A DNA stretch of 64,000 bases. Origin: Pocillopora damicornis. Lineage: Eukaryota. Positions within the stretch are counted from its first letter, which is position 1. Every line of letters starts with the position of its first letter. Positions 42,499 through 64,000 of the stretch are shown piece by piece. The notes under the pieces are model-generated. The model did not search any database. It was not told the DNA's origin and saw only the letters and a program-made list of their open reading frames with translations. The DNA lies in the NCBI RefSeq assembly GCF_003704095.1, contig NW_020844270.1:682001-746000 (forward strand), written 5' to 3'. The translations under genes were made by a program, and so were the position numbers.

Positions 42499-46578
<4,080 letters not shown>

Positions 46579-48021
46579 GTTTGACCCGAACTAACGCAAC
46601 CTTAAGGAAATTAGGGCTCACATCAGGCAGAAAACGAAATCTTCACTTTCATATCTATCTTATCATTTATCTGGTGTGAGAGTGTATCCGTGTAACAAGC
46701 AAATGAACGTAAATTTACGGTGATGACAAGTATAAAGGCGATGAAACACCTACGTCAATAGCTTCAGACCTAACCGATCGAACGCCAACGTCGATTAGAG
46801 ATATCCCGAGGGAATTTTTACCCAGTGGGATTGGGGCTAGTACTGAGTCTCTCAATGGCACGAGCTAAGCCCGGTCAGCCAAATGCCAAGTACCTTTTCT
46901 TCAAATCCTCGCTTGATTTTTCTTCTTTCTTTTTTTGGGGAAGAAAAGTTGTAAAACTCGCTGTCTGATAGAATAGGTAAAAAAAAAAAGAAAAAAATTA
47001 TAGCCAAAGAAATTATAACCGCAATTAAGGTTACCATAAGACTTGAACCGCAAGTCAGAATCCAGGCTTACGGAGCAACACAAGCTTTTTTTCTTGGAGC
47101 GGAAATGACATTTTCAAGGCCCTCTTAGCTGAGATGACTAGGTTCGCGCCCCGAAAAAATGGACACTGTCATTTTCTCGACGTAATTATTCAAATCTTGG
47201 TTGGGGATAATTTTTTTACATAGAAAAGGGCAGGCATGTAATTGCCCAGCTGGCAGCAAGTTTAATAAGATCTTCCTATATTTTTTTGTGGTAAAAAGTT
47301 CAGTTATCTCATTTGATTGTTAGAGAACATTGACAGGAAAGTTAAGCCTATTTAGACGAATAACGACCACTGTATGTGTATCGAGAAGCGGTCAGATCTC
47401 AGTAGCTTATGTTGCTGGTGACCGAGTAAACATATACTTTCCAGACTGAAGCCCTTCCTGAACGAGGTCTGATTTCGTATGTCACTCGTCAGTGAAGATG
47501 GTGATAATAGATTGCAATCGGTTCGCTCAATGCAACATCTTTCAACCTGTTGTCATGTGATACAACCTCTTTCTAGGAATCGACATGTTTCCGCCAAAGA
47601 CGATGTAAATGGGCGTGTGCTCAAACGAGGGTCGAAATCAACGCCCTTCTGGTGTTTCCAATGGTGCAAAAATAAAATAAGCTTGTGAGTGCAATTCACT
47701 CAAAACTGTGTGATCTCTTTTATTTTGGTGAACGATTTTTCTCTTAATAGGTGAACTGTTGCTCTCTGCTCGCAACAATAAAGAGATCAATAAGATCATC
47801 AATGGCGTCACTACTTTTAATAGAAAAGACCACGAACTCGCCTCAGGAAAGTGTCAATAGCGGATGAAATCATCTGCTAACTGAGACTCAGCGATTTTTC
47901 CTGCCAAGATTGGTCTTGATTACGCTTAAATTTGACGCGCAAAATTTGTCGAAAACTTCATTTGAGCAACCTCACTTGATTGCAAAATATACTGGAATAC
48001 AAGGGAATCAAGATAGCGCTC

Positions 48022-51000
48022 ATGCTGTCCGTGTGGTTGGTGGTGTTATCCACCCTCGTCGCCGCGAGTCTTGGAAGCATTGCTCCAGGGAAGCGATCTG
48101 ATTTTTCCATGTCTGACAACCAGTTTTGTAAGTGAGTTTCAGATTGCCATATCATATGGTTTTGTTGCGAATTAGAGTCCAAATTCAAGAATACAACCTC
48201 GTGAATCGTAAATGTTAAATCAGTTTAATGGATTCATAAGAATTTTGAATTATTTTGACAGTCTGAGGAAAATTCCGTGCGATAAAATTTCAACGATGAA
48301 TTCGATTTCGAAGAACTTACGATCAACACAGCATAACCTTTTGTACTACATCTAAAGCTAACTATTCCATGCGTAGGTTGAATCGATTTTGTGATGAGAA
48401 TAATTGATATCAGAGGTAGGTAAACAGTGAACGTGTTTGCAGATCGCGTCGGAGACACGAAACTGGATGATGAGGTCACAGACTGTGCTCTTGTAGAACA
48501 TCAGTTCAAGAAAGGATATATCCGATTGCGAGAGTATCTGGAACGGAGAAGGGGATGTGGAAGAAAAGGTAACTTACTAATAACTCTTCTCTGCGAGCTG
48601 AATATATCAAAACCATAATAAAGGATTATTTTGGTACCTGTAACAGGTGGATGGTTTTGACGAAAAGCTTGATATATAAGTGTGGACGAAGGCAAGACGG
48701 AAACTGGGTCCAGTGCACGAAATAGAGGCTGGCTAATAACTTTTTTTCCGCTCAATATTAATGTCGATCTGAAAGACAAACTCGGGCTTTTGAGTCGCTG
48801 TTCGTGTTCATGGCTAAACCCAAATAAATTTTGGCAGAGACAACCCAAAGAGAAGAAGGGCCAAACGGATAGAGTGAAACAATTCGTTTGCTTGTTTGTT
48901 ATAATTAATTTATTGAGCATTTTACCAGTTGGCCTCGAGGTGATGCACTTGACCCAGTTTCCCTGGATCACAGCTTTACCTGGCACAAAGGTTTATTAAA
49001 AAGAGTCTCCAATGTGAGAGAGATGAGTAAATTAAAGAGAAGCGTGTCGAGTCACTAACATGAAAACGCTAAAGTTTAGGTAGCGCAAAACTCTTAGAGC
49101 GTCAGTTTCTGCTTGTTTTCGGGTGGATTATCGTACCTCAAATCTTCCTCTGAAATTATGATCAGAATTCAGTGCGCAACTTTAAGTGTCAAAGTGTTTG
49201 ATACTCTTCTGCGTTTTAATCAATCGTGCCTTACTTGGTTTCTTCTCTTTCAAAAGACCGCTTAATTTTGTCACTATAATGACACCAGTTTGTTTGGATA
49301 AACACAGGGCCCCAAATGGATTTCTGTAAATACTACCAAATCTGCAATAAAAAGTACCATTTTCATCTGAATGCTTGCTTTGAAACTCAGGAGAGTTTTT
49401 AACAAATACAAAAATACTAAACGTTTGAACGTGTCCTTTAGTAGCATGTCGTAATGATGTGGGATATTGATCAAATGAAGCCTTTAAGTGCTACTGTGAT
49501 TCTTTCTTTATTCACTCCGAGCTTTCGCCGTTCTACGGCATCATCAGGGAGGACGATAAAATATTTGCGCTATGGTTTTAAACGTTGGAGGTGCCACTGT
49601 AAATTAGCATAGTGTAAAACTAGCCAGTAGGACGCATGAAAACTAATGGCGTGATAAAATGTTCTAAAATATGTGTTAAAAACAGTTAATTAAAATAGCT
49701 CATTAAAATAAATCATTAAAATAGAAGATCGTTAATGTATTGACTTTATAATCTCATGATCATGCAACGTTTTTATTGCAGGAAAACTTAAAAACATCGA
49801 AGGAATTGAAAAGTCAACAGAGGATGACATTAACAACGAAAACATCGCCGAGATCGCCAAATCGGCCACTGAAGACTTTCACTACTCTGTGCCGTCTCCA
49901 TTGCCCGTCGCCAAGAAGGTCCCTAAGCTCAAAACTATTCCTCAAGGTGAGAGTTTACCTTGTTATTTTATTTTGATGGAGCAAGTTTCAATTGAATGTT
50001 TAACATGTCAAAAGATATCCATTTTTGTTGGGTCGGAATTCCTTGACAGCGCTCTGTCATTGGCGATGAAATTTCACGCCAGCCTCTTGACCAATCAGAT
50101 GGCGCTCCTCACGTTTGAGGCGCTTTGCTGGTTTTTGATTTATGTGAGCTCCGATTGCTCCTTGGGAAAGTCTCCCTGACCCTGTTTGGGGTTATAAGTT
50201 TTAACGACATTAAATCAAAAAGTGTCTTGATTTGCGTCTCAATGATATGTTTCTTTCGCCATCAAACAACAGCCAACACATTCGGGTTTATCAAGACGAA
50301 TTCTTTAGGCACTTTCAGTTTTTGAATACAAGAGCTCGACGATTACAAATACAAATTTTGGCATTATCATACCGAAGGTTTATGATTTGAGACAAAACAA
50401 CTGCTCAATCAATACTTAGATTGAAACAGATCCTTGATCTCCTTCTTTTGCTTAGTGATCAACATTTATCAGCCTCATAAAATGGCTTATGTGCCCCGCA
50501 GGCAACCTGTGCCAGGTGGGTGTTAGAATAAGCTAACTAATAACTTGATTAATCAACAGTCATGCAGCTAGGGCGTACTCCTTCAGTGTTGAAAGCCTTA
50601 ATAGCACCCCCATTATCTATTTAAATATAGGTTTTTTAGCTTTAGTAAGTTTCACTGGCACTGTTTGGCCGAGAAAATGTTTCTGTTAATGCTTAGACGG
50701 AAGGTGACATTCACTCGTGTAATCCATGCACACCTCGCTCTATGCTTGGTTATAAGAATACATGCCACTAAAAGTTATCAATCAAATGCAAGTTAGTTCT
50801 TTAGGCACTCGAACGATAGATCTTTCCTCAAGCCCTGGGCGAGCAATGCGTGTTTTGGGACAGGACACTAATTTTCAATGTATCTCTTACCACCCAGAAG
50901 TCAAGTGAGTGCCGGTGAATATTCCTTAAATGTTGCAAATGTGGCACAGACGTAGGCGCAGTTTGGATAACCTATAGTTCTTAATACTTAACCAGCACTG

Positions 51001-52566
51001 AAAATGAGATGACTTTCTGGGACTAATTTAGACAGTAATGTGATGTAAGCAATGAAGTAATTCTAGCTATACTACCTTCAATAAATCTTGTTCTTGTCGC
51101 TAACAGTGGCGACAGCAACAGGAAAAACAGCGGTACAGCACACTCCCGCCCGCCCCGCTCTCCAAGCCACGGTACAAAGGAACAAGCCAGCAAGACCAAG
51201 CTTGAGCGACTATCAAAGCAAATCTCAGAATTTAGGACTTTCCTTTAAGAGCAACCCATCTGTCGCGGCTTTTCCAAGCTCTGTGGAGAATCAAAACACA
51301 CAGGCTCTATTCACTAACGCGCTCGGGGATCAATACACGCGTCTGGCTTCCAACTACGATCACCTCGATCAACCAAAACCCAACCACGACCTACTTCAAA
51401 CATTTTATCCAGGCACATTTCAAGAAGGCTCACACACTGGAGAAACTGTTGCTGTGGGTCAACCGCTGTTCGTTCAAAAAGCCCGCGTCCAAACCACCAC
51501 TAATCCTCAAAACAAAATGTCCAGCTTCCTAAAAAATGCAATAAATAACTTCAATAAGCCCTCATTAAGCACGCCTGCTAGTACCAGTACATATAAAGGA
51601 CCAAGTATTAACTCTCAACCACAGGTTTTGAATAAATCTACCACAAAAATTAATGCTCAAAGTAACCCGGACGAAAATATCGACGAAAATCTTGCAGCTA
51701 TGCGCGATCCCGAAAAAGACGACAGCAATGGTTCAATCGATGAAAAACCTACTCCGGAACCTGGAATTGACGATAAACCAGCTAACCAAGCCACCATCAT
51801 TCCTTCTAATGATCCCAGCTCATTGTCTTTGTCACAGAGACCTAGAGTACAATTAGAACCAATGAAACCTGTTTCAGACATGTCAAACGGGCTTGGAAAG
51901 CCGATTATGAAAGGAACCCCTACATCTGTAAACAAACCGCAGAATGCTGTAGCTCAACACAACACTGCTCCAGAAAAGCTTCAACAGCCTTCAGTCAACT
52001 TTGATGTCCTCAAAAACAAAATTATGCATACAACCAATGCAACTTTCCTACGGCGCATGCTCACGCTTATTCAAAAGATCACTCATCACAAAGACTTTTC
52101 GAAACTGCAAGCCCCTGCTCGGAGTCTGGTGACCCAGGCGAACACCGCTGTCCAGGCGCTCACTAATGCGTATAAAGAGAGAGTTTCGTCAACACCGCTG
52201 GCCGGTGGAAATGGTGATCAGCTATATCCCCTGAGTAAGAAGTCCGCTGTCCAGAGATTTAGTCAGGCGTACAACGGGAGAATTTCAGCTTCGCCGCTAA
52301 ATTTCGGAATTGTTAACCAGATTTATAGGAATGTCTATCCAGCGACCAAAAAGTCGACTCTCCCAGTGATGAATCAAGTGTATAACCCAAGGATTGCAGC
52401 CATAAGACCTGCTAACCAATTTTATGGCAACAACTATTCGGGGCTGACCAAGAAATTCCAAATAGCAAGGAATCCCTATTACCAGAACTATTACCAATAC
52501 AGACAACCGTATTACAGCAATTTGCAGAGTATGCAATACGGGTTATACAACGGCAATGAACCATGA
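48022..52566 (+). CDS. Uncharacterised secreted precursor A, 5 exons, ~638 aa (signal peptide, KR site, C-x23-C exon, long P/Q/N/S/T-rich region, Tyr-rich C-terminus)
   Basis: Exons 48022-48127, 48443-48568, 49782-49946, 50456-50515, 51107-52566; all introns GT-AG phase 1, frame open. N-terminus MLSVWLVVLSTLVAASLG-SIAPGKR. Confidence 0.8.
49515..49551 (-). ncRNA. Apparently intact minimal type I hammerhead ribozyme (Penelope-type) in intron 2 of precursor A, antisense
   Basis: Minus strand: CUCC-CUGAUGA-U-GCCG-UAGAA-CGGC-GAAA-G-CUC-GGAG followed by UGAAUAAA. Stem I CUCC/GGAG, stem II GCCG/CGGC, palindromic AGCU stem III, CUC cleavage triplet. Confidence 0.8.
50815..50930 (+). mobile_element. 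Degenerate tRNA-derived SINE remnant
   Basis: TCAAGCCCTGG...GTGTTTTGGGACAGGACACT...TCTCTTACCACCCAG...GAGTGCCGGTGAA resembles a widespread metazoan SINE body as I recall it; no intact tRNA cloverleaf. Confidence 0.4.
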
Positions 52567-53797
52567 GTTAAACTGTTTGAAATGACTCAGACTAAAAAAA
52601 CCAATGTCACCTGTTATAGGTTTTCGCAGCGTTAATAAGTGAACAGCGCATAATAAATGCATCCGAGTAGACAAGCCTTTGGACTAGACTATTCCTCTCC
52701 ATCATCTTCACCTACTACACTTTGTATGTGCATTGCTGATTACCACGCAACCTAGCAAGTTGGACAGGCTGTAATGAAGGGCGCTTACGATTATGACGAG
52801 CCAATTATGACTGGTTGTAAGCGCCCTGGGCAAATGCTCTTTCTCTGTACTTTTGCCTAATCGATGAGGCTACCTAGAGCCGGGTACTCTTTGATTGTTG
52901 GCAACATCTTCTCTTACCCCTACTGTAACTTTAGATAAAGTTCTCAACTTGTATGAGATTAATTTTTCTCTTTCTTCGTTCCTTGATTTTTTGATGCAAC
53001 ATTTTTGCAGCTTACGTTAAATCAATATTATGTAGTTTCGTGCCGTTTTGTGGTTTACAAAGTTTACTTGTCATGTGATATTAGGTCACATAAAAAGAAA
53101 AACCTATCACGGTACTGTTGAGAAATCATGTCGAGAAATCAAGATTAGCCTAATGTAGTCATTTTTTGTATACGCATACTTTAAAGATAAACTGATTTTA
53201 GATTTTAGACAGTCAGTTACCCCACAACCAAATATAGGAGAACCTTACTAACGACCACTGAATTAATGAAACACTATATATAATTGTAAAGGCTTTGTAG
53301 GAAAATAAAAATTTGATGTTAATATCGTCATCAGTTTCAGTATTATTTCGGTTCATCTTTCCTAAGCGACCAAGCGTGTGAGACTAAACCCCTACGTGTG
53401 CTACTCTAGCCTAGCTGGCCCTTGCTATTAGTTCTTCAATACAAGCTTAGCTTTTCTTCGCTGGAAAGAGGCCTATGAGCGGCGCTAATCGGTCTGCAAG
53501 AGGGTCCAGCAGTTAATAATGAGGACCCCTACACTATTAGTGCCAGACTCCCTGCAAACCTCTCCCCTAATCGTCTCACGCGGGCGTGAGCTTACTTCTT
53601 TCTTAATTTATTCAGTGTGTTCTCTCTGATTTAAACTTTTTCTTGTTTACGCTTTATCCAAGATGAGCGGATATGAACGCGTATTGAATTACAAAGAGTG
53701 TCCCTCGAATTTATCCCCTTTAATCCATTCCGAGTAAAGAGCATCCGATCCATCGGCTGGATAGGGCAGTGAACTTTTAAGTTAAAACAAGATTCCA

Positions 53798-54011
53798 TTA
53801 ACCCTCTGACCCCTAAGAGCGAATAGCATCTGATCCCTCCTTGCAATATCTCCCCGAATCACAGATTAAAGTCACGAGAATAAAGAAAATGATCACCAAC
53901 CAAAGAAGCCCTTGATTGTTAAACAAATAATTTCCTCGTTAACACCTCAGGATATTCACAGAGAACAGTATGGAGAATATGCATACTGATGTATGGCTGT
54001 GAGAAGCTCAA
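53798..54011. mobile_element. Family B TTAA MITE
   Basis: TTAACCCTCTGACCCCTAAGAGCG...AAAGAAAATGATCACCAAC...GAGAACAGTATGGAGAATATGCATACTGATG. Confidence 0.8.
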
Positions 54012-54575
54012 GGAGCAAGAAAACTATTCCCTAACGCCTGTTTTAATCGATAAACACGATACAAAGATTTTTACGGATAGCTATCTTTCTCAGATTTAGG
54101 AGAGGCTGAACAAGGAAAATTTCTGGAGGGGACTGAAATTTGTCAAGGAGGACTGTTAACGTTTTATAGATTTGACCCTACAAACTACCCATTTTTATTT
54201 CTTTCTTATGACCACAAGATCCCTTTTTTCGCGTTTGTAGAATTTTCTTTTTCTTGGTGATTTATAGTTTTCATCTCTTGGCACCTGCTTCAGTTAACAT
54301 AAACCAAATCATTTGTACCAATCAACACGAAGAGTACCTCCATAAACTGTGGACCTAGCAATAAAATAGAAGTCCCGCGCGCGGCTTTAATTGGTTATCG
54401 TTGGTCCCAAAATAACGTAATACCAAAACACTGGGTGAGATCTGACTTGAGCAACGCAACTGCCAAATTTGGTGTCTTAGCTGATGGTAGAAATCAAAAT
54501 TTTGCTGGTTTTGATTTAATTTGTTAAGTTTTAACTCGATCAAACCAAGCGGAACTGGACCGTGTGTTTGAAAGA

Positions 54576-56066
54576 ATGGAGCGCTTCACACTTGCTTGGG
54601 TTCTGTTTACGCTTTGTCTGTGTTCTGTGTTAGGAAGACCCGCAAAACAAAAGTCATCACTCTTAAAGACGATAGTCAAGAGATGGGACTTGATCGTCGA
54701 AAACGACCGTAAGTCAGTGAAGTGTTTAATTTTATGCCCGCTATGTTAAGATCATCAATTACCAACACAAACGCTCTAAGCGTGCCTAACGGGGCTCACA
54801 ATCCATCAGAAAAATTGACAAAGCACTTGAAAGAAAACCATGATCTCAAAACACAAATTGTATTTGAAATGTCAGAAAACACCTGCTGGTCTCGAGTCAT
54901 GGCGATGTAAAGATTGTCAATCATTACTATCACATTCTCCTAATCCTACCTATGTTTTGGTCAAAGTTGGTGGGAAAGGTTTGTTTTGGCGCAATAAGGC
55001 ATTTTAGGGTAAACTTGGGTTGAAGGAATTTTGTTTTCAACCTTGTGACATAGCCTACATGTGATTACCCCCCTCTCCCTCCCCCCCGCGTGATCCCTAA
55101 AGAGGAGGGGAGGGAGGAGAACTTCATCAAGTTCACTGCTGTCAACTGCTTCTTCCGCGCCGAAAAAGAGCCCTTGTTAGTCTGCCCCTTGCATAATAGG
55201 CTTCCCAAGAACTGAGGGCAGGAGGGACACCAACTCTTCAACATTTTTTGATTCATCTATCGGCCTATAAATTTATTCATTTATTAATTTTTTTTTTTGC
55301 TGTACAAATTAAATCATAATGGTTCGGGGTCTGAGAGAGCAGCATTCATTCGACATCACTGAAACGACAAGTTACCTGAAGTTGCTGATCGAGTACATGA
55401 TTAACCAGGTAGCTTCTTGTAAATAATTCGCAATTCTCCCTTAAAACAGTTGCACTATTCCCTGGGTTATCATGGGCTCTGAAATTTTCAAGCTGAGTCT
55501 TAATTACTGACATGAAAAGAAACTAGATGCTCACTCAAACTTACTATCGGAAGTGAGTCAGTTTTTGGCAGCAAAATATAGCAAAAGGTAAGGATGACAT
55601 CGTAGATTTCGCTTTGGCGGGTTATTACATGCTACATCATTTCCATTACAGATAGATTGGAAAAGCACAACAATTTCTTCGCAATAATGTGTATGTTCAA
55701 TTTTATTTACAAGTAACACATACTTAAATTTGTATGCGCCATTACCTGTTAGCCATATGTTGCGTCTATGTTGAGTCCATAGTTTGCATACAACTCTGTC
55801 AGGAAGTAATGGAATTTCAGCGTCTCCTTCATTCCTTACAAAGGCTAGAATTTCTTACCACCATCAGTAGTAGCAGCTATGAAGCAAAGGCTTCCAGATT
55901 TTTCATTACTGATTAGCTATGCCAAGCTTCAAGCCATTTGTCTCTGTGCATGGGATACTCTGGTTTAGCTGTTGCAAATCACGGTTTGAAATTATATCCA
56001 GACGGAAGACGAGACATCATGGACCGAACCACGCGCACTACTAGTGCGTCGAAATGTAAAAGTTAA
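54576..56066 (+). CDS. Candidate 78-aa prepropeptide (amidated peptide precursor B), 3 exons
   Basis: Exons 54576-54708 (donor GTAAGT), 55652-55690 (TTCCATTACAG / GTATGT), 56002-56066 (TATCCAG); phases 1,1. Product MERFTLAWVLFTLCLCSVLG-RPAKQKSSLLKTIV-KR-WDLIVENDHRLEKHNNFFAIMY-G-RR-DIMDRTTRTTSASKCKS. Exon 1 is well supported; exons 2-3 are predicted only. Confidence 0.55.
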
Positions 56067-56591
56067 AAAAGAAACAGAGCATTTCGGATCACCGGAAAAA
56101 ATACAAGTTTGCCAAGTAAATGAATTTTCCGCAACCTCTAAGAGCGTCAGATCTAAAGGTGAAAATCAACCGCAAAAGGTGTCTACGTACAACAATCCTT
56201 ATGGTAAAAATGGCACAAAACTTGCCAATAGATACACGTTTATTAAGTTTTGATTCTTCTGTTTAATTGCTATGTATACTTTAAACCCTCCACAAGCTTC
56301 GTTCGCAAGTGTTTGATACTTCATACCTCAGTGAACGACGAAAAACTCACCTGCTAGTTCTTAGGAGATCGTATCAGTTTTAGCAGGTATCTCTTTGTAG
56401 ATAGAAGATGAAAAAATTGACATGCTAAGGAAAACATGTTTAATTCATAAAGTTGTGACACTTCCTGTAATGTAGTGAAAGCAAAATCAGAGAGCACGCG
56501 CTCCCTTGGGTTCTCAACCGTGAACAAGAAATCCTTGGAATCCATTTCTCCGTAATTTCACCTCGGACCCTCGGGTTTCGAAGATTTCAAG

Positions 56592-59500
56592 ATGAGGAAA
56601 AGCGTTCTTTTGATCCTTCTTGTGTTGATCGCAATTTGTGCGGCTAAATCGTCCACGAACAAGAAACACAAGGATGAGAAAAGCAAAAAACTTAAAGTAA
56701 CCGACACTAAGAAACACAAGGACGAACCGAAAAAACACAAGACTAAGAACGAGCATAAAGACAGCAGCAAGAAACATCTTAAAGATGCCAAGAAAAAACA
56801 AGACTTGAAGAAAAAAGATGAAAAACCAAAGATTTCGGAAGATAAGGCCATCAATAAGACGGCAAATAACAAGACCGAAATTGTAGAAAAGAAAGAAAAC
56901 AGCACCAAAGGTAAATTGAAATTTTGAAAATCGAATTCCGAGTTACGGGGAAACGCCGGTTCAAGAGCAATGACTATTATGACGGGTACCGGTCAACTTT
57001 TCAAAATAAATTCAGTTCATGCCAGGTGCTTAGGCTGGGGAGTTCTGTACTATCCAGATGTTCTGAGAAAAATTGCAGCGAATTCGGATAGTATTTTATT
57101 ATATTACAATCGATATTACATTCAGTATCCGAACAAGTATCCTTCCTGGCAAGCGCGCAATTTCACTGTCATTGAGTTAACCCCGTGAAGTTAACCGGTG
57201 GAAATGATTGGTCAAAACAAAAGTACATCTTCTGACAGAAAACACTAACTTCCACTCGTGTGTTGATATTCCTGTTCTTATCTTTACCATAGCTTTAACA
57301 CATTTTTTTAAATAGCCTCAATCACTAAGGATATAGATTCACGTTAAAACAAAGCTGAAGTGGAAAAAGCTTTGAACCTCTTGATCCGTAACTGACGCGG
57401 TGAGGTGAAGATATAGATAACAGACTCGATTATTACTCAGTTTCATCCAAGTAATATCTAATCTAAGTCATTTAACGAAAAACAAGTTCTTTTTCTCTTC
57501 TTGACAGGCGGTTTATTGTTAAGCGCGTGAAAAGTGATGCAAAAGTAATCTAAGCGACATGAAACGTCGGCTATGTGTTATGACTGAATGGTGTGGCCAC
57601 AACTCATCAACACCTCCAGGTTATAACTCCACGGAGCCCTGTCACAGGGTTTGACTAAAAATTTCCGAGATCTTACCTTACCCTTCCCTCCCTTAAAAAA
57701 AATCTCATCATGATCCACGAGGAGATGGGCTGGCTCGGCTCAGTATAAACCTTGAAAGGTCAAAGGCCACGTTGTAAATGATTATCTCTATACAAGCTGT
57801 CATTTCGCGCCTGTGTGAACATTTAGTCGTGCAGAAATGTCAGCTGGGTAAGCGGGATAAAATTCCCTTAGATAATGGATTACTAGAAAGTCGCCCTTCA
57901 AATTGGACCCCTCCTCATTTCGGGCTCATTAAGAGGTCCTTAAAGGGCAAGGGTGTCTGCGAATCAGGTGGCCGAGTCAATGAACAATTCGGAAAGCTAT
58001 GTATAGTTTGCGATATAAGGTCAATTTTAAGGGTTAACTCTTGCAATGTACATTTTTTAACCTTCTCGCTTTTCTAAAGTGTTCTTTTGTCTTCATAACA
58101 GCAATCCTCTCACAAAACCCACCTGCCGATTGCCAGAATATCATAGACGATTATTCCAAAGGAAAATTGCTAATGTACGAGTACAAAATTCAGATCAACC
58201 GGTGCATGAATAAAGCTAAGAGTGATGCAGGTAAGTGGTTTGATTGACTGACAGTTGATTGACAGACAGATGATTGACAGTTTATTGATGGACAGGTATA
58301 CTTGCATCTGATGATACAACGGGTTTTCAAATTTGAGTTATACTCAGGTATAGGTAATTAGCATGTGGTTTTTAAATCTTGGCTGTTGGCAAAGAGGTTT
58401 GGTAGACCCGCGTGAAAAAAAAGTTAACAGGTAATGTACACTTATAATCTCCTCAGTCAACTGAATTTGTAGGATTGAAGTGGAGGGGAGAGCTTCAATA
58501 AGGCTATTTTTTTCATGCACAAACAGTTAGCGTTCGACACCAGCTGGATGAAAACCTCTCGTGTCAGAAAAGTGTGTCTGGGAGTTATTTCCTTTTAAAC
58601 CTTTGATCCCCAAACCGTTCACATTTGCGCTGGATCTACCTTGCATTCCTCATCAAGCTAACACAGAATGCGTTAAGCCTGTTTCTAACAAACCTTTCCA
58701 TAATCACTTAAGTCACGGTAACCCGCTAACAACTAACGCTCAAAACATTGTATAACGCATTAATCACAGACGGCACAGCTGATGCTGACGCAAAATCAGC
58801 ACTGTTGCGTCCGGACAGTGAACCGACAGAAGACACTGACACGGATCAAGCTGTCAATGTGAGACCTTACAGCACCGAAGAACAAAAAGAGGACTTTGAC
58901 GAAGACTCTGACACAGGTCATAGCGATTTTAGCGCGCATGATAACGATAACGACGATGATTACAATGATGATGATGATAAAAGTGACGATTACGACGAAC
59001 CGGAAGAAAACGCAGGTGAAAATCTGGTTAGAACAAGTTTCAGGAGCTTATAAAATATTTCCACTGTGTTGAAGCCACGCTCTTAATTAATGCCGAATAA
59101 TCTGTAACGGTGCTAAACCAGCTGTAACTGCATATTAACTTGTTCGATAAAATGATGGTAATTGTAGACAAGAGAGGAAAGGAATTTACAGTTGGGAAAA
59201 TTGCCATTTGGAACCGATTAACAAGTTTTAATTACACGCTATCTGTTGGTCATCACATGTAAGTTTGCAAGGAAATACAATATTTGCGTTGCTTCGACCA
59301 CCTACAGTTTCAAACAAAAAGAACCAAATAAACCCACAATTATGGCCTTAAATGTGACAGGTTACAAAGGAGCCGTTAATGTTATTTAATCTAAAAATCA
59401 GTTTTTCTACACCTCTGTGTGCCTAAATTTAGCTAAAAAGATGCAAGTCCCTGCAACTTCTGGTTACCAAGTTCCTGATATGACAGTCCAGAATTACAAC

Positions 59501-61309
59501 ATGCCAGCTCAACAGCCAGAAATGCCAGCGCAACAAGCCGCCTTTTACTACCCCAATACGGGTAAATTAGTTTTCTTGTTCAAGCTCCTATTTCAAAGGT
59601 TAAGTGAGAATTGGCTGACCTTGCGATAGAAGGAAATTAATTGATGACTTACAAAAATGGCCTATACTCAATCCAGAATACGCTTGGACATGGGCCAGGA
59701 AGACTGGGTCGAGTATATCGAGTCCAGGCTCAACGGTACACTCCCCGCGTAAAGTAACTAAAACTTCATGGAAGTTCTTGTTTGTTTAAATAGTTCTGCT
59801 TGGCTCTCGGCTTTTCTTTCAGTAAGCACTTATGGGAAAATGTTTAGATGTATAATGGAATTTCATAAAGATAGGACATAAAGGGAGGGAGCTGGTCATT
59901 TCACTACATTTCTCTGGGAAGTTTACCTGCAAGCCTCAACCTTGTGTACTCGACTCACGTTCCCTGCCACTGAAGTAACTGACAGAACTCGACGATTATT
60001 GACCGAGCGATTTTGAAACATATAGAACCAGTTCATACAGTGTATACATGACGATTACCTCAACTCAGAGCTCATCGCAATCATGAACTTTCAACCATTG
60101 ACATGGACAAACCTATGCAAAGATACTTAACTTCACGGTGCATCCATCTTACATCTCTCTCCCAAAGCGAAGAATAGAACGCATTTCCATTCCACCACAA
60201 AGGCGATAGTTCACTTATTGTCTTACAAACCGATCAAACCTGAGGAAACATAAGCGCAAATACTTTCATTTCATTTTGATAGGAGATTTCTTTAGTGTCT
60301 AAGCTTTGCAATAAACTTGAAATATCGAAGTATTCATCAAGTTTCCAAATATTTTTTAGCCCAGACTCCATATAACGGAGCACCAGTTCAGAATCCAGTT
60401 CCCGACCAGACTCAAGCAGCTTTCGCTCCAAATCCTACGAACCAGTACCCAGCCAATCCTGCTCCTTTCCATTCCGCAGATCCAAATATGGCCATGAATG
60501 CTATGGCCAAGAACACCATACCAGACGCTGAGACACAGGTTAGTTTAAAAAAGGAGAGAGAGAGAGAGAAAGAGTTCATGAGAATTAATGAAGGTAACGA
60601 ATGTCTTACGTTCCGGTCCAGCAATCTGATAAGGGCAAAATTTCCACCCCGCTCGCAAGGAACGACACTACCCCATGTGACTGCCTTTTACTCCGGCAAT
60701 TTGTCCAAGTTTCTCGAGATTGTTTGTAAGAAGTGCAACTACATCTTAAGTAAGTTTGAAAAGCTTAGTTTTGAAATTTTTTCTCTTAACTGAACAACAT
60801 ATTATACCACTGCTGATATGAAGTTCAATTACGGCTACCATGCTCTTATCAACTGAATTAAAACTGGTGTCGGGAGTGGGAAGCATGTAGTGTTCGAAAC
60901 AACCAAAAATACATTGTGTAATTGATACTTACTCTTGACCACAAAATTTCCTTAGATACAGCAGCCCCCAGCATCTCAAGCAAATGCAGTGTTCGATCAA
61001 TGGCGAGCCAGCAGTTTTGGTGCAGCAGCTGCTACCAAGAAGGACGAAACACCTAACGCTCCAGAAGCTCCCGGCAATGACCAATTCGCAGAGTTTATGA
61101 AGATGCAAGCTTCCACTGGTAACGTAGCGGAGGCATCACCTATAAGCCAGCAAGCAGCTATTCCAGCGGCCATGCAACAAAGAAGTGACGTTCCACAGCA
61201 GCCAAATGTGTTTCCCGCGCAGGTGCAGTTACCCAACACTGTCCCTGGCCCAAGCCAAGCCTTTTACATGCAACCTGAAGAGCATGGTGATTTCCCTGAA
61301 AACCCATGA
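56592..61309 (+). CDS. Uncharacterised secreted precursor C, 6 exons, ~451 aa (signal peptide, Lys/His-rich block, C-x23-C exon, Asp-rich block, P/Q/A/M-rich tail)
   Basis: Exons 56592-56910, 58102-58230, 58770-59015, 59433-59561, 60360-60538, 60956-61309; GT-AG, phases 1,1,1,1,0, frame open. Signal peptide MRKSVLLILLVLIAICAA. Confidence 0.82.
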
Positions 61310-61619
61310 GAGAAAAAGTACTCGGTTTTGATATGATCACTTTTGAGGGTAATAACGTAATAACCTCACTCACTATGTGGAGCTCTGAAGGGTGAAAAAC
61401 TTTTCTTATTTGGAGGGGAAACAGCACAATTTCCTAAAAAGGAGTTTCAGTAAGACGTGATTATTCTCATGCAGTGACCCACATGGAACCTTTCACCTCT
61501 TGCTCACGATATCAAGTAAATGTTGGTGGGCAGAATGGGGCAGATAACAACAACGAAATAAAAGTGTCCTCTTTCTAACACGGTTTTGTCTCGTCTAACT
61601 ATGATTAAAAATTTTTGAT

Positions 61620-61710
61620 TGTAGCGCAGCATGGTTGAGTGCATCACTCTCGCAATTTGGGTTTGAGTTCCGCCCTGGCCATCAGCTGACTTTGTGTCAT
61701 GGTAATCCCA
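61620..61710 (+). mobile_element. Degenerate tRNA-derived SINE head
   Basis: GCAGCATGGTTGAGTG...GGGTTTGAGTTCCGCCCTGGCCATCAGCTG, with A/B-box-like remnants. Confidence 0.35.
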
Positions 61711-61829
61711 ATCAAGTTTGGTTGATCTAAAGTATCTGTCGTGTTAATTAAGTGAAATGCACGTGAACCAGCTGGAGTAGTCCGAGTATACTTCCAGTTA
61801 AAACGCAGCGCGTACAACTACAATTTTCG

Positions 61830-64000
61830 ACAGTCATTCCTAAGGCGTGGCCTCAGTTTGAAACCTTCCATCAAATGTACACAGGGTGATTCTCCGGACA
61901 AGCTTTAGATATGACAGTAACGAGAGGTTTCGTTGCAATTTGTTTCTATCACCAACCCTTTAGGTCTTGGTAATCGTCCTTTCTCTTTGATAGAAAAAGG
62001 ACACGCTACACAGTACTAACTACTTAGCTTGGGTGTAGACTTAACTAAGTTTTTACCTTCTCGCAGTAATATGGAGTGAATCCCTGTTCAAATGAACCAC
62101 CTGACAGTAAAAAATGCGATAAAATCAAACCCTTACCTACCTCCCCCCCCCCCAAAAAAAAAATACAAACAAACAAAACAAAAATAAAAACAAACAAAAT
62201 ACGCAAGTAGTAGCCATTGAGGTTTCATCTCCTGACCGTCACTCTCACCGAATCTGATCCCCTGCTATCCAGATAAGACTAAAGGGGGAGGGGGGGAAGG
62301 GGGAGAGGAGAGAAATGGTGTTTTAACCCACGCATGCTGAAAAATCATACTCGGATTATTTCATATCCAACCTGGGATTTGCACCCAGACCACGACCGTG
62401 ACAAGTCACTACGCGTATATTGTTGGATCTCACTTTGAGGATGTTCCCAGCATACAGAGGTTGGCAGACAGACAGGTCCAAGATGTCAAGCCTCTCGGTG
62501 GTACATAATAACCATTCCCGTTCCTTCACTTATAGTTTTCCCATGGCTACGTAATCTGAAACCTAGAATAACAGACGTCTGGTCTAGTTTGAGTCCAACT
62601 TGTAGAGGGGGTCAGTTAGATCAAAGGACTGTAGCGGCGAGAACCCGAGTAGCAAATATTTACAGTTTCTCTTCATACTTTTATGCAATTTGGCTGCCTA
62701 TGATCCCAACGACAAATCAAGACGCTACGACTGCTTCTCTGAAACACGTTTAAGTAACGGGGTGTTGGGTAGAGTCGGAAATCGACTTTCAGTGGGCGAC
62801 TCCTCCTTAGTGGGACCTAGCCTCTGGAAATCTTGCATGGTTGAGTGATGGGCCTTTAAAGATAGTGTCAGTACGTCAACGGTCGAATGTGTTTGAAAAC
62901 CACCACTTTTACAAGAAACAGGTTATACAGTAACAATACTTTAATTGAAATGACTCGCTGTATGTTAATCAGGAAACCCTTCACTCTAAAAGAAAATTTC
63001 TATTAGCAACTGCACCACAGACAACGGGACTACTGCGATGCAAATTTATTAAATGTGGGGAAACAGCAACGATTCTCACTCCAAAAGGTCACGCACACAG
63101 TCCTACACTTCTTGACATACACAAAGGACAGTTGATTGTGGCTTTCATTCCTAGCACTACCGCACAATTACCAAACGTGCTTTGGAGGCTTTCCGGAAAG
63201 CTGCTGTATTTCCCCTCTTAAAGCTCAGCTTTGTGGACTACGTAACCGCGTCCGCTCTATTAAATTCAACTTTTGGTCCCGAAGACGTCTTCGTAGACCT
63301 AAAATGGTCAATGTGTGGGAGCTCTTAGCTCGACGAAATTTTAACCTCTTTCCAAATTCGGGAAAGCGATGCCTCATTTTTAAGAGGGACTACAAGCTGT
63401 TTAATAGAACTACTGTTTTCTAAGTCAATTTCGAGTCCCAGCGACATATTCACAACGTAATGCTAGACAAAAACCACAAAAAAGGAAGAGAAAGATATAA
63501 ATGACAAAAAAAAAAAAAAAAATAATATATATATATATATATAAATAAAACAAGAAACAATACTCCTATTCAAGTGGAGAGGATTACCCCTGGCACCCTA
63601 AAAAAATTAATTTCTTCTCTATATAAGTAGCAAAATAATAGTAGTGATTCCAAAACAAGAGTTGAAATGAAAGAAAATTCCTCGTAAAAATCCTTCAAGT
63701 TGTGACCTCGCCCTCGGACTAAACTGAGCTATATCAACGTTATCTCAAGTTTGTAAAATAATTAACCAGTTTGAGACATCCACTCAGTAGTTCACTACAT
63801 GACAGTCCAGAAATCAGAAAGAAAAAAAAACACCTAGGCACAATAACGAAACACATCAACTTACCATGGGCCATAAACATACCAGGCGTTTCCGGGAACG
63901 TGATTCTGCCTCCTGACAAAACCACCAATCCTCACCTGGAACCGCAGCACAAAAACTGTACCCTCCATCCAAAGCACTGGAGAATTGGTGCGATGGCAAT
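61830..64000 (-). pseudogene. Decayed multi-exon gene with SRCR-like and sushi/CCP-like remnants, truncated by window end
   Basis: Splice-bounded relics: 62562-62434 (FRLRSHGKTISEGTGMVIMYHREA*HLGPVC), ~62278-62200 (LIWIAGDQIR*..SGDETSMATTC), 62100-62057 (GSFEQGFTPYYCEK), ~61900-61845 (LSGESP/LCTFDGRFQTEATP*), ~62728-62680 (SSRSVLICRWDHRQPNCIK). In-frame stops and frameshifts present. Confidence 0.45.

What the first reader, a model, noticed from the sequence alone, without database searches (positions are those of the whole stretch)
48443..58230. Shared exon-encoded C-x23-C mini-domain in two otherwise unalignable secreted proteins
Seen: exon 2 of A (48443-48568) encodes DCALVEHQFKKGYIRLREYLERRRGC and exon 2 of C (58102-58230) encodes DCQNIIDDYSKGKLLMYEYKIQINRC. 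Spacing is identical, consensus DC-x6-[FY]-x-KG-x-[IL]-x-[LM]-x-EY-x6-C. Both exons are phase 1-1 (126 and 129 nt), and these are the only cysteines in the mature proteins. Inference: a disulfide-closed helix-Gly-helix hairpin. The G-x-I-x3-EY pattern recalls SHOCT-type motifs, so it may be an oligomerisation or sorting module. In A it is followed by GRK, a possible Cys-amide end.
Basis: partly seen in the sequence, partly recalled or inferred. Interest (0 to 1): 0.75.

Follow-up and report, generated by a model that had tools for sequence, protein, structure and literature searches.

The report
Shared disulfide hairpin exon in coral genes
Two neighbouring stony-coral genes for long, floppy secreted proteins each begin with a small, strongly conserved two-cysteine helical hairpin encoded by its own exon, an unnamed module that is probably a binding or sorting handle.

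Summary
Window 48443-48568 and 58102-58230 are real phase 1-1 exons (126 and 129 nt). Each encodes D-C-x23-C, and these are the only cysteines outside the signal peptides.

All relatives examined keep the pair: 8 of 8 gene A relatives (corals and sea anemones) and 12 of 12 gene C relatives (corals only). In both families the loop is far more conserved than the rest of the protein.

Six positions are invariant across both families: D-1, C0, G10, E16, Y17 and C24. The K of 'KG' is not one of them.

Similarity between the two loops is weak but non-random:
- BLASTP E 0.002 and hhalign P 0.0016.
- Column permutation without the cysteines gives p 4e-5, or 0.003 for the inner loop alone.
- Neither loop retrieves the other in database searches.

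Separate AlphaFold2 runs give the same helix, 5-residue turn at the Gly, helix layout (pLDDT 71-80). The rest of both proteins is disordered.

The two genes are also adjacent in Acropora.

There is no Pfam match, so neither SHOCT nor Granin is supported. The proposed Cys-amide end is not conserved.

The closest analogue is the separately exon-encoded N-terminal disulfide loop shared by chromogranins A and B. Function is untested.

The parts
48022..48127 (+). Gene A exon 1: start codon, hydrophobic signal region, KR, ends in phase 1
   Evidence: Translation. GT donor. Matches residues 1-35 of the Stylophora orthologue P0002.
48443..48568 (+). Gene A exon 2: hairpin module, D-C-x23-C, 126 nt, phase 1-1
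   Evidence: 8 of 8 full-length relatives keep it. Predicted helix-turn-helix, pLDDT 71.
49782..49946 (+). Gene A exon 3 (165 nt, phase 1-1), acidic helix-prone stretch after the hairpin
   Evidence: AG/GT flanks. tblastn of P0002 residues 78-132.
50456..50515 (+). Gene A exon 4 (60 nt, phase 1-1)
51107..52566 (+). Gene A exon 5: long disordered region, conserved helix, KK-delimited units, conserved C-terminus, stop codon
   Evidence: 41 homologues found with this exon's open frame.
54576..54708 (+). Gene C alternative first exon 1a: signal region plus a short stretch ending ...VKRWDLIVEND, phase 1.
   Evidence: Loose ends before 58102 in 4 of 4 runs carry the last letters of this exon. Public records P0049, P0050, P0052 and P0056 carry this form.
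56592..56910 (+). Gene C alternative first exon 1b: signal region plus a lysine-rich stretch of about 90 aa, phase 1
   Evidence: Joint 56910|58102 in 3 of 4 runs. Sequence. Public records P0042, P0048, P0053, P0054 and P0064.
58102..58230 (+). Gene C exon 2: hairpin module, D-C-x23-C, 129 nt, phase 1-1
   Evidence: 12 of 12 relatives keep it. Predicted helix-turn-helix, pLDDT 77-80.
58770..59015 (+). Gene C exon 3: Asp-rich acidic cassette (246 nt, phase 1-1), alternatively skipped
   Evidence: Joints 58230|58770 (3 of 4 runs), 59015|59433 (4 of 4 runs) and the skipping joint 58230|59433 (2 of 4 runs). Public records exist with and without it.
59433..59561 (+). Gene C exon 4 (129 nt, phase 1-1)
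60360..60538 (+). Gene C exon 5 (179 nt; the following intron is phase 0)
   Evidence: Joint 59561|60360 in 3 of 4 runs. One contig spans exons 4-5-6 (table 8). Splice sites.
60956..61309 (+). Gene C exon 6 with conserved C-terminus and stop codon

Best explanation
The two exons encode copies of one small, undescribed protein module. It is an alpha-helical hairpin of about 30 residues: helix 1 from the Asp-Cys, a five-residue turn at an invariant Gly, then helix 2. The open end is probably stapled by a Cys0-Cys24 disulfide.

The module sits directly after the signal-peptide exon of two adjacent, same-strand genes of a stony coral (Pocillopora). It is the only confidently folded and by far the most conserved part of two otherwise disordered secreted proteins. 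Gene A is basic and also occurs in sea anemones. Gene C was found only in stony corals, and its net charge is switched by an alternative first exon and an acidic cassette exon.

The two copies most likely descend from one ancestral exon, either by tandem gene duplication or by duplication of a symmetric phase 1-1 exon into the neighbour. This happened before the deep split among stony corals.

Shown: the exons, their splicing (gene C), conservation of the Cys pair and of D, G and EY, and adjacency in other corals.

Predicted: the hairpin fold.

Inferred: the disulfide, and the role. I take the hairpin to be a specific self-association or partner-binding handle that anchors or sorts the long disordered tail in the secretory pathway. 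It would work like the N-terminal disulfide loop of chromogranins A and B without being a member of that family.
For: Conservation.
- 8 of 8 gene A relatives and 12 of 12 gene C relatives keep C-x23-C. No other Cys lies outside the signal region in the full-length records.
- Loop identity against the rest of the protein, gene A, Stylophora versus Nematostella: 81% against 28%. Gene C, Pocillopora versus Acropora: 81% against 49%.
- D-1, C0, G10, E16, Y17 and C24 are invariant in a 10-row alignment of both families. K at Cys2+5 is also invariant in both.

Similarity.
- BLASTP E 0.002 and shuffle 2/3000.
- hhalign of the family profiles gives P 0.0016, in register.
- In an unrestricted comparison of the full-length family profiles, the best local alignment is signal peptide plus loop, with the cysteines in register, E 0.01.
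- Column permutation with the Cys columns left out gives p 4e-5 for columns -9 to +29 and 0.003 for the inner loop. Register 0 scores +37.5, against -21.6 or lower for every shift from -6 to +6.
- The shared positions 0, 3, 7 and 14, 17, 21, 24 fall on one face of each predicted helix (for the columns; the faces are my inference).

Fold. Separate AlphaFold2 runs on family-specific alignments end helix 1 at Cys1+8 and start helix 2 at Cys1+14 in both proteins. pLDDT is 71-80 there and under 50 for most of the remainder.

Genomic context.
- Same strand, with the two loop exons about 9.7 kb apart.
- Both loop exons follow a signal-peptide exon and both are phase 1-1.
- Adjacency is kept in Acropora cervicornis (consecutive locus tags) and A. 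palmata (gene numbers two apart). In Stylophora both lie on a contig of the same length.
- A profile of both loops finds exactly these two places in the 234-Mb genome. The next hit has E 3.2.

Analogue. [quoted passage not shown]
Against: The sequence signal between the two families is weak.
- hhalign probability is only 16% for the loops and 4% for the full-length profiles.
- Only 3 inner-loop identities are family-wide.
- Neither exon peptide finds the other in the own genome.
- A phmmer search of 1.84 billion representatives with the C loop returned no gene A relative.
- A loop-restricted search with the A loop returned no gene C relative (that search depends on shared 5-residue words).

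Other weaknesses.
- The exon borders are offset: 13 against 9 codons before Cys1, and 3 against 8 after Cys2.
- Phase 1 is the phase of nearly all introns in both genes, so it discriminates little.
- The positions shared are those any stapled helical hairpin would need, so convergence is possible.
- The column range for the p 4e-5 test was chosen after I had seen the K at +5.
- The fold is a moderate-confidence prediction from shallow alignments of 8 and 10 rows.
- The disulfide and any binding or sorting role are untested.
- Gene A proteins are basic (pI 8.9-9.8), unlike granins.
- I have no cell-type expression data.
Confidence: 0.55

Rival explanations
1. Chance or convergence. The two loops are unrelated short helical hairpins that happen to share a 23-residue Cys spacing and a few fold-dictated residues. 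The genes are neighbours for unrelated reasons.
For: hhalign probabilities are low, 16% and 4%. No cross-retrieval occurs in any database search. With the Cys fixed, identities alone give p 0.05. The exon borders are offset by 4-5 codons. The rest of the proteins does not align; the second-best segment has E 0.19.
Against: The register-specific profile score is +37.5 against -21.6 or lower at all 12 shifts, with permutation p 4e-5 and 0.003. The predicted helix borders are identical. Both modules hold the same rank in the gene, lie on the same strand, and have been adjacent since before the Pocillopora-Acropora split. They are the only two such modules in the genome.
Confidence: 0.2
2. The loop is a released, disulfide-cyclised bioactive peptide (hormone or toxin-like). 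It would be cut out at flanking basic sites, in gene A with a C-terminal Cys-amide made from C-G-R-K.
For: A conserved KR lies after the signal region in gene A and in exon 1a of gene C. Basic residues follow Cys2: GRK/GRR in some A relatives and NKAK/KKAK in C. The extreme conservation of every loop residue within each family suits a ligand.
Against: The dibasic pair after C-G is missing in 4 of 8 gene A relatives (GRQ, GRQ, GRE, GTA). Gene C has no Gly after Cys2. The loop itself contains KK or RKR pairs that would be cut. In the exon 1b isoform there is no KR just before the loop.
Confidence: 0.12
3. The module is a diverged member of an already named domain, either SHOCT as the first reader suggested or the granin N-terminal loop.
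For: The general layout matches CgA/CgB: a separate exon, an N-terminal position, and sharing by two dissimilar secretory proteins (PMC2132667).
Against: No Pfam family matches at E<=10 for either exon peptide. At E<=1, six full-length relatives gave only four weak hits, all below Pfam's cut-offs and none covering the loop. A PDB sequence profile search gave only two weak, partial hits, the best at E 0.008 over 17 residues of a splicing factor. The ring is 25 residues from Cys to Cys, against 22 in CgB. The Ile of G-x-I is Leu or Ile in gene C, and the residue after G differs.
Confidence: 0.04

Closest known systems
N-terminal disulfide-bonded loop of chromogranin A and chromogranin B (granin family)
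   Same: A short loop closed by a single disulfide lies close behind the signal peptide and is encoded by its own exon. It is the best conserved part shared by two otherwise very different, largely disordered secretory proteins. In CgB it is required for sorting to secretory granules (PMC2132667; abstract and passages read). Gene C isoforms carrying the acidic cassette are acidic (pI 4.2-4.9).
   Different: There is no sequence or Pfam match. The ring is 25 residues (C-x23-C) against 22 (Cys16-Cys37). Gene A is basic (pI 8.9-9.8). Granule localisation is unknown. The taxon is cnidarian, whereas, by my recollection, granins are described from vertebrates.
Small disulfide ('CC') loops of peptide-hormone precursors that drive self-aggregation and granule sorting
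   Same: A single-disulfide loop near an end of a secretory precursor acts as an aggregation and sorting signal (PMC8807871; title, abstract and outline only).
   Different: Those loops are described as small. The present ring is 25 residues and is predicted to be a helical hairpin. No aggregation test has been done here.
SHOCT domain (Pfam PF09851; name and motif recalled, not from a call)
   Same: It is a short helical module with a Gly followed by a hydrophobic residue and an acidic-aromatic pair.
   Different: No Pfam hit at permissive thresholds. By my recollection SHOCT is bacterial, C-terminal and without a Cys pair.
Generic alpha-hairpins in solved structures
   Same: The confident part of the gene C model (residues about 49-91) superposes on helical hairpins of many unrelated proteins.
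   Different: The best Z is only 4.3, and 0 of 48161 chains reach Z>=5. That is below the level the tool itself calls meaningful for helical folds, so no specific structural relative was found.

Membership tests
Granin (chromogranin/secretogranin, Pfam PF01271) | Match to the family profile | tested here: not met
   0 Pfam families at E<=10 for both loop exons. No Granin hit at E<=1 in 6 full-length relatives.
Granin (chromogranin/secretogranin, Pfam PF01271) | N-terminal 22-residue loop closed by one disulfide (Cys16-Cys37 in human CgB), on a separate exon | tested here: inconclusive
   Met: separate exon, N-terminal position and a single Cys pair. Not met: the ring size is 25, not 22 (for CgB). 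The disulfide itself was not tested.
Granin (chromogranin/secretogranin, Pfam PF01271) | Acidic, disordered polypeptide with many dibasic sites | tested here: inconclusive
   Gene C with the acidic cassette: pI 4.2-5.6, 3-12 dibasic sites. Gene C without the cassette: pI 9.1. Gene A: pI 8.9-9.8, 10-15 dibasic sites. Both are mostly below pLDDT 50.
Granin (chromogranin/secretogranin, Pfam PF01271) | Storage in dense-core secretory granules and Ca2+/low-pH aggregation | not testable with these tools
   No localisation or biochemical data. Cell-atlas supplements are closed.
SHOCT (Pfam PF09851) | Match to the family profile | tested here: not met
   No hit at E<=10 for the exons or at E<=1 for full-length relatives.
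Amidated peptide precursor (X-Gly-dibasic processing site) | Conserved Gly followed by a dibasic pair directly after the last residue of the peptide | tested here: not met
   C-G is invariant in gene A, but the next two residues are RK, RR, RR, RR, RQ, RQ, RE and TA in 8 relatives, so 4 of 8 are not dibasic. Gene C has C-M or C-L.
The new hairpin module itself (working definition: D-C-x2-[VI]-x3-[FY]-x2-G-x-[IL]-x-[LM]-x-E-Y-x6-C) | Motif kept in orthologues of both genes | tested here: met
   20 of 20 relatives examined (8 of gene A, 12 of gene C) fit it. Column contents are listed and the sequences.

The most novel reading that the evidence does not exclude
Genes A and C are cnidarian counterparts of the chromogranin pair. 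The stapled hairpin would be a granule-sorting or assembly signal. The basic A protein and the acidic C protein, whose charge is tuned by promoter choice and by a cassette exon, would co-condense through like or paired hairpins to scaffold regulated secretory granules, or in corals a secreted matrix. That would place a granin-like loop-plus-disordered-tail cargo scaffold outside bilaterians, arisen either independently or from a very old common plan.
Probability: 0.12. Interest if true: 0.8.

Novelty: new variant of a known kind. Interest (0 to 1): 0.45.

Why it matters
If the reading is right, this is an unnamed, deeply conserved folded module. It has persisted since before the sea anemone-coral split in gene A and across the stony corals sampled in gene C.

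It would be the only structured handle on two abundant, otherwise disordered secreted proteins that public annotation now labels with misleading automatic names (triadin-like, SEN1-like, sec16-like, B-cell linker-like).

It gives a concrete, small construct of about 40 residues for testing how cnidarian secretory cells sort or assemble disordered cargo. It also offers a natural parallel to the chromogranin loop, whose mechanism is still debated.

For coral biology, gene C combines a coral-restricted distribution with an optional Asp-rich cassette. That makes it a candidate to check against skeletal-matrix and cell-atlas data.

Tried and rejected
Searches that led nowhere.
- Each exon peptide searched alone against the own genome finds only itself.
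- A profile of both loops finds only the two loops plus one hit at E 3.2 over 17 residues in a 25-aa open frame, which I take as noise.
- ESM Atlas searches on the loop regions of P0002 and P0049 gave no usable hit.
- A PDB sequence search gave two weak partial hits.
- A PDB fold search of the gene C model gave only generic helical hairpins, Z<=4.3.
- A metagenome scan with the two-family alignment gave 6 loci, all gene A-type at 85-88% identity. None bridges the families, and they were not used further.
- An Rfam scan of 46000-64000 gave 0 families.

Paper searches.
- Locus names and accessions of the relatives: 0 papers in each of three searches.
- Four conserved peptide motifs: 0 papers.
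- This covers main texts only.
- Granin together with cnidarian: none of the 15 listed papers contains both words.

Readings rejected.
- SHOCT kinship.
- The Cys-amide end.
- A beta-hairpin reading of the alternating LLMYEYKIQI stretch in gene C; AlphaFold2 gives helix.
- 'Gene B' as a separate gene using exon 54576-54708. That exon splices to the loop exon.

Joined models. Every window-derived query was a single exon. Full-length comparisons used public protein records returned by the tools.

Full report
WHAT IS THERE. The window is eukaryotic DNA of about 38% G+C with no N. It is contig C905:682001-746000 of a 234.35-Mb assembly in 4393 contigs. Public records identical or nearly identical to the proteins encoded here are labelled Pocillopora damicornis and P. 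verrucosa, so this is a stony coral.

The exons are 48443-48568 (126 nt) and 58102-58230 (129 nt). Both have AG/GT flanks and both are phase 1-1.

GENE MODELS. Window queries were single exons, and full-length work used public protein records returned by the tools.

Gene A has five exons: 48022-48127, 48443-48568, 49782-49946, 50456-50515 and 51107-52566. All its introns are phase 1. The model rests on colinear matches to the Stylophora orthologue P0002. It also rests on transcript-derived proteins of relatives that span all junctions, for example P0024, 713 aa on a 2811-base contig. I have no reads for gene A in this species.

For gene C I laid contigs of four polyA/oligo-dT RNA-seq runs from two studies on 56400-62300. 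The GT..AG joints are:
- 56910|58102 in 3 of 4 runs, with a matching loose end in the fourth
- 58230|58770 in 3 of 4 runs
- 59015|59433 in 4 of 4 runs
- 59561|60360 in 3 of 4 runs
- one contig running through exons 4-5-6

Two further features emerged. The acidic exon 58770-59015 is skipped in 2 of 4 runs (joint 58230|59433). In 4 of 4 runs, contigs entering the loop exon from the left carry letters that are the end of 54576-54708.

Gene C therefore has two alternative first exons, each with its own signal region. Exon 1a is 54576-54708. Exon 1b is 56592-56910 and adds a lysine-rich stretch of about 90 residues. Exon 1a is what a companion first-stage note took as exon 1 of a separate 'gene B'.

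Public isoform records show both first exons, and both cassette states, in Pocillopora, Stylophora, Orbicella, Porites and Acropora.

IS THE MOTIF CONSERVED? The open frame of gene A's large exon found 41 homologues. A loop-restricted search added Nematostella and Actinia. All 8 full-length gene A relatives keep D-C-x23-C and have no other Cys outside the signal region.

A phmmer search of 1.84 billion representatives with the gene C loop exon gave 6 hits at E<=0.001. Five are coral gene C relatives. The sixth (E 9.7e-4, a repetitive 689-aa protein matching 18 residues) I regard as spurious. A loop-restricted search gave 10 gene C relatives, all from stony corals where named. All 12 gene C relatives examined keep D-C-x23-C.

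In both families the loop is much better conserved than the rest:
- Gene A, Stylophora versus Nematostella: 81% against 28%
- Gene C, Pocillopora versus Acropora: 81% against 49%

The K of 'KG' is variable, while G is invariant. Invariant in all 10 rows of a two-family alignment are D-1, C0, G10, E16, Y17 and C24. K at Cys2+5 is also invariant in both families.

ARE THE TWO LOOPS RELATED? Evidence for:
- BLASTP E 0.002 for the single comparison.
- 2 of 3000 shuffles reach the observed score, and p 0.008 for the inner loop with the Cys fixed.
- hhalign of the family profiles gives P 0.0016 in the Cys-Cys register.
- With full-length family profiles and no restriction, the top local alignment is signal peptide plus loop in register, E 0.01.
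- Profile column permutation without the Cys columns gives p 4e-5 for columns -9 to +29 and 0.003 for the inner loop. Register 0 scores +37.5 and every one of 12 shifted registers scores -21.6 or lower.

Context adds to this. The genes lie on the same strand, with the loop exons about 9.7 kb apart. Each loop exon follows a signal-peptide exon. Adjacency is kept in Acropora cervicornis (consecutive locus tags) and A. palmata (gene numbers two apart). In Stylophora both genes lie on a contig of the same length. By my recollection Pocillopora and Acropora belong to the two deep stony-coral lineages, so the pair would predate their split. A two-family profile finds only these two places in the genome.

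Evidence against:
- hhalign probabilities are 16% and 4%.
- Neither loop retrieves the other in any database search.
- The exon borders are offset by 4-5 codons.
- Phase 1 is the rule throughout both genes.
- The shared residues are those a stapled hairpin needs.
- I chose the wider column range after seeing K+5.

I put common descent at about three in four. A whole-gene tandem duplication and a duplication of the symmetric exon into the neighbour would both fit. The only other aligned segment between the families is weak (E 0.19).

FOLD. Two separate AlphaFold2 runs were made on full-length public records with their own family alignments of 10 and 8 rows. Both are low in confidence overall (mean pLDDT 42 and 39). 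Both have their highest pLDDT at the loop.
- Gene C: H53-63, turn 64-68, H69-87, pLDDT 77-80.
- Gene A: H44-58, turn 59-63, H64-72, pLDDT 71. Gene A also has a second confident region, the helix around 451-513.

Relative to Cys1, helix 1 ends at +8 and helix 2 starts at +14 in both. The turn holds the invariant Gly at +10. With that geometry Cys1 faces position +22 to +24, so a staple to Cys2 at +24 is feasible. This is my inference, as the tool returns no coordinates.

The shared hydrophobic positions 3 and 7 on helix 1, and 14, 17 and 21 on helix 2, would form the interface. Family-specific invariance of the exposed positions suggests that each hairpin also contacts something specific. A fold search found only generic helical hairpins, best Z 4.3, with 0 of 48161 chains at Z>=5.

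WHAT IT IS NOT.
- No Pfam family matches either exon at E<=10.
- At E<=1, six full-length relatives gave only four weak hits, all below Pfam's cut-offs and none on the loop.
- SHOCT and Granin membership are therefore not supported.
- The proposed Cys-amide end fails. 4 of 8 gene A relatives lack a dibasic pair after C-G, and gene C has no Gly there.

WHAT IT MOST LIKELY DOES. Both proteins are secreted (hydrophobic N-termini; inference), hydrophilic (GRAVY -0.7 to -1.25) and predicted disordered. They are rich in Q, N, P, S and A, at 37-49%. Gene A relatives are basic, pI 8.9-9.8. Gene C ranges from pI 4.2 (exon 1a plus cassette) to 9.1 (exon 1b, no cassette).

The only structured, strongly constrained element is the hairpin at the mature N-terminus. 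The closest known arrangement is the chromogranin A/B loop. According to the passages I read in PMC2132667, that loop is a 22-residue stretch closed by Cys16-Cys37. It is highly conserved between two otherwise different granins, is encoded by a separate exon in both, and is essential for sorting CgB to secretory granules. A later paper (PMC8807871; title, abstract and outline seen) reports that small disulfide loops of peptide hormones promote self-aggregation and granule sorting.

I therefore commit to a self-association or partner-binding handle that sorts or anchors the disordered tail. For that functional step alone I give about 35-40%. A released cyclic peptide, or chance or convergent similarity, are the rivals. 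Nothing here tests function.

KNOWN OR NEW. I found no paper naming these genes or motifs in main texts. Supplements are closed. The public names are 'uncharacterized' or evident low-complexity artefacts. The module is unnamed and, as far as these searches reach, confined to hexacorals. Its kind, a single-disulfide N-terminal loop on a disordered secretory protein, is known from vertebrate granins. I class it as a new variant of a known kind, of moderate interest.

LIMITS.
- The single reads call went to gene C.
- The alignments are shallow.
- No signal-peptide predictor, multimer model or coordinates were available.
The scan has not, to my knowledge, found this module on other DNA.

Noticed in passing
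window 54576-54708 and 56592-56910: Gene C uses two alternative signal-peptide first exons, one short and one adding a Lys-rich stretch of about 90 aa. Both are conserved across coral genera.
   Followed up: partly
window 58770-59015: The Asp-rich cassette exon is alternatively skipped (2 of 4 RNA runs, and public isoforms). Together with the choice of first exon it moves the predicted pI of gene C products between 4.2 and 9.1.
   Followed up: partly
window 60237-62400: Contig joints with CT..AC ends (GT..AG on the minus strand) lie at 60237|60931, 60239|60353, 60527|60933 and 61294|62056. Loose ends at 61295 and 61298 continue at about 62353 and 62375. A spliced antisense transcript may overlap exons 5-6 of gene C; the contigs are unstranded.
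   Followed up: no
window 49490-49725: Another first-stage note reports a minimal hammerhead ribozyme here, in gene A intron 2. An Rfam gathering-threshold scan of 46000-64000 returned no family at all. I ran no permissive scan.
   Followed up: partly
window 51107-52566: The C-terminal third of gene A is built of roughly 30-residue units bounded by KK or RKK. There are more copies in Acropora. It ends in a nearly invariant KKF[QE]I[AE]R[NK]P ... YG[LI]YNGN tail. A second conserved helix (I-N-[FL]-[DE]-x-L-K ... K-I-T-H-H-K-D) has pLDDT 58-65. The layout resembles a prohormone but was not examined.
   Followed up: no
window 62130-62310: A low-complexity tract (poly-C/A run followed by a G/A-rich run) lies downstream of gene C. 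The reads tool skipped 62129-62201 as a repeat.
   Followed up: no
public records P0042, P0060, P0064, P0066, P0052: Automatic names given to gene C relatives (triadin-like, helicase SEN1-like, PFC0760c-like, sec16-like, B-cell linker-like) look like low-complexity artefacts. No Pfam domain supports any of them in the four gene C records scanned (P0049, P0064, P0054; names).
   Followed up: partly
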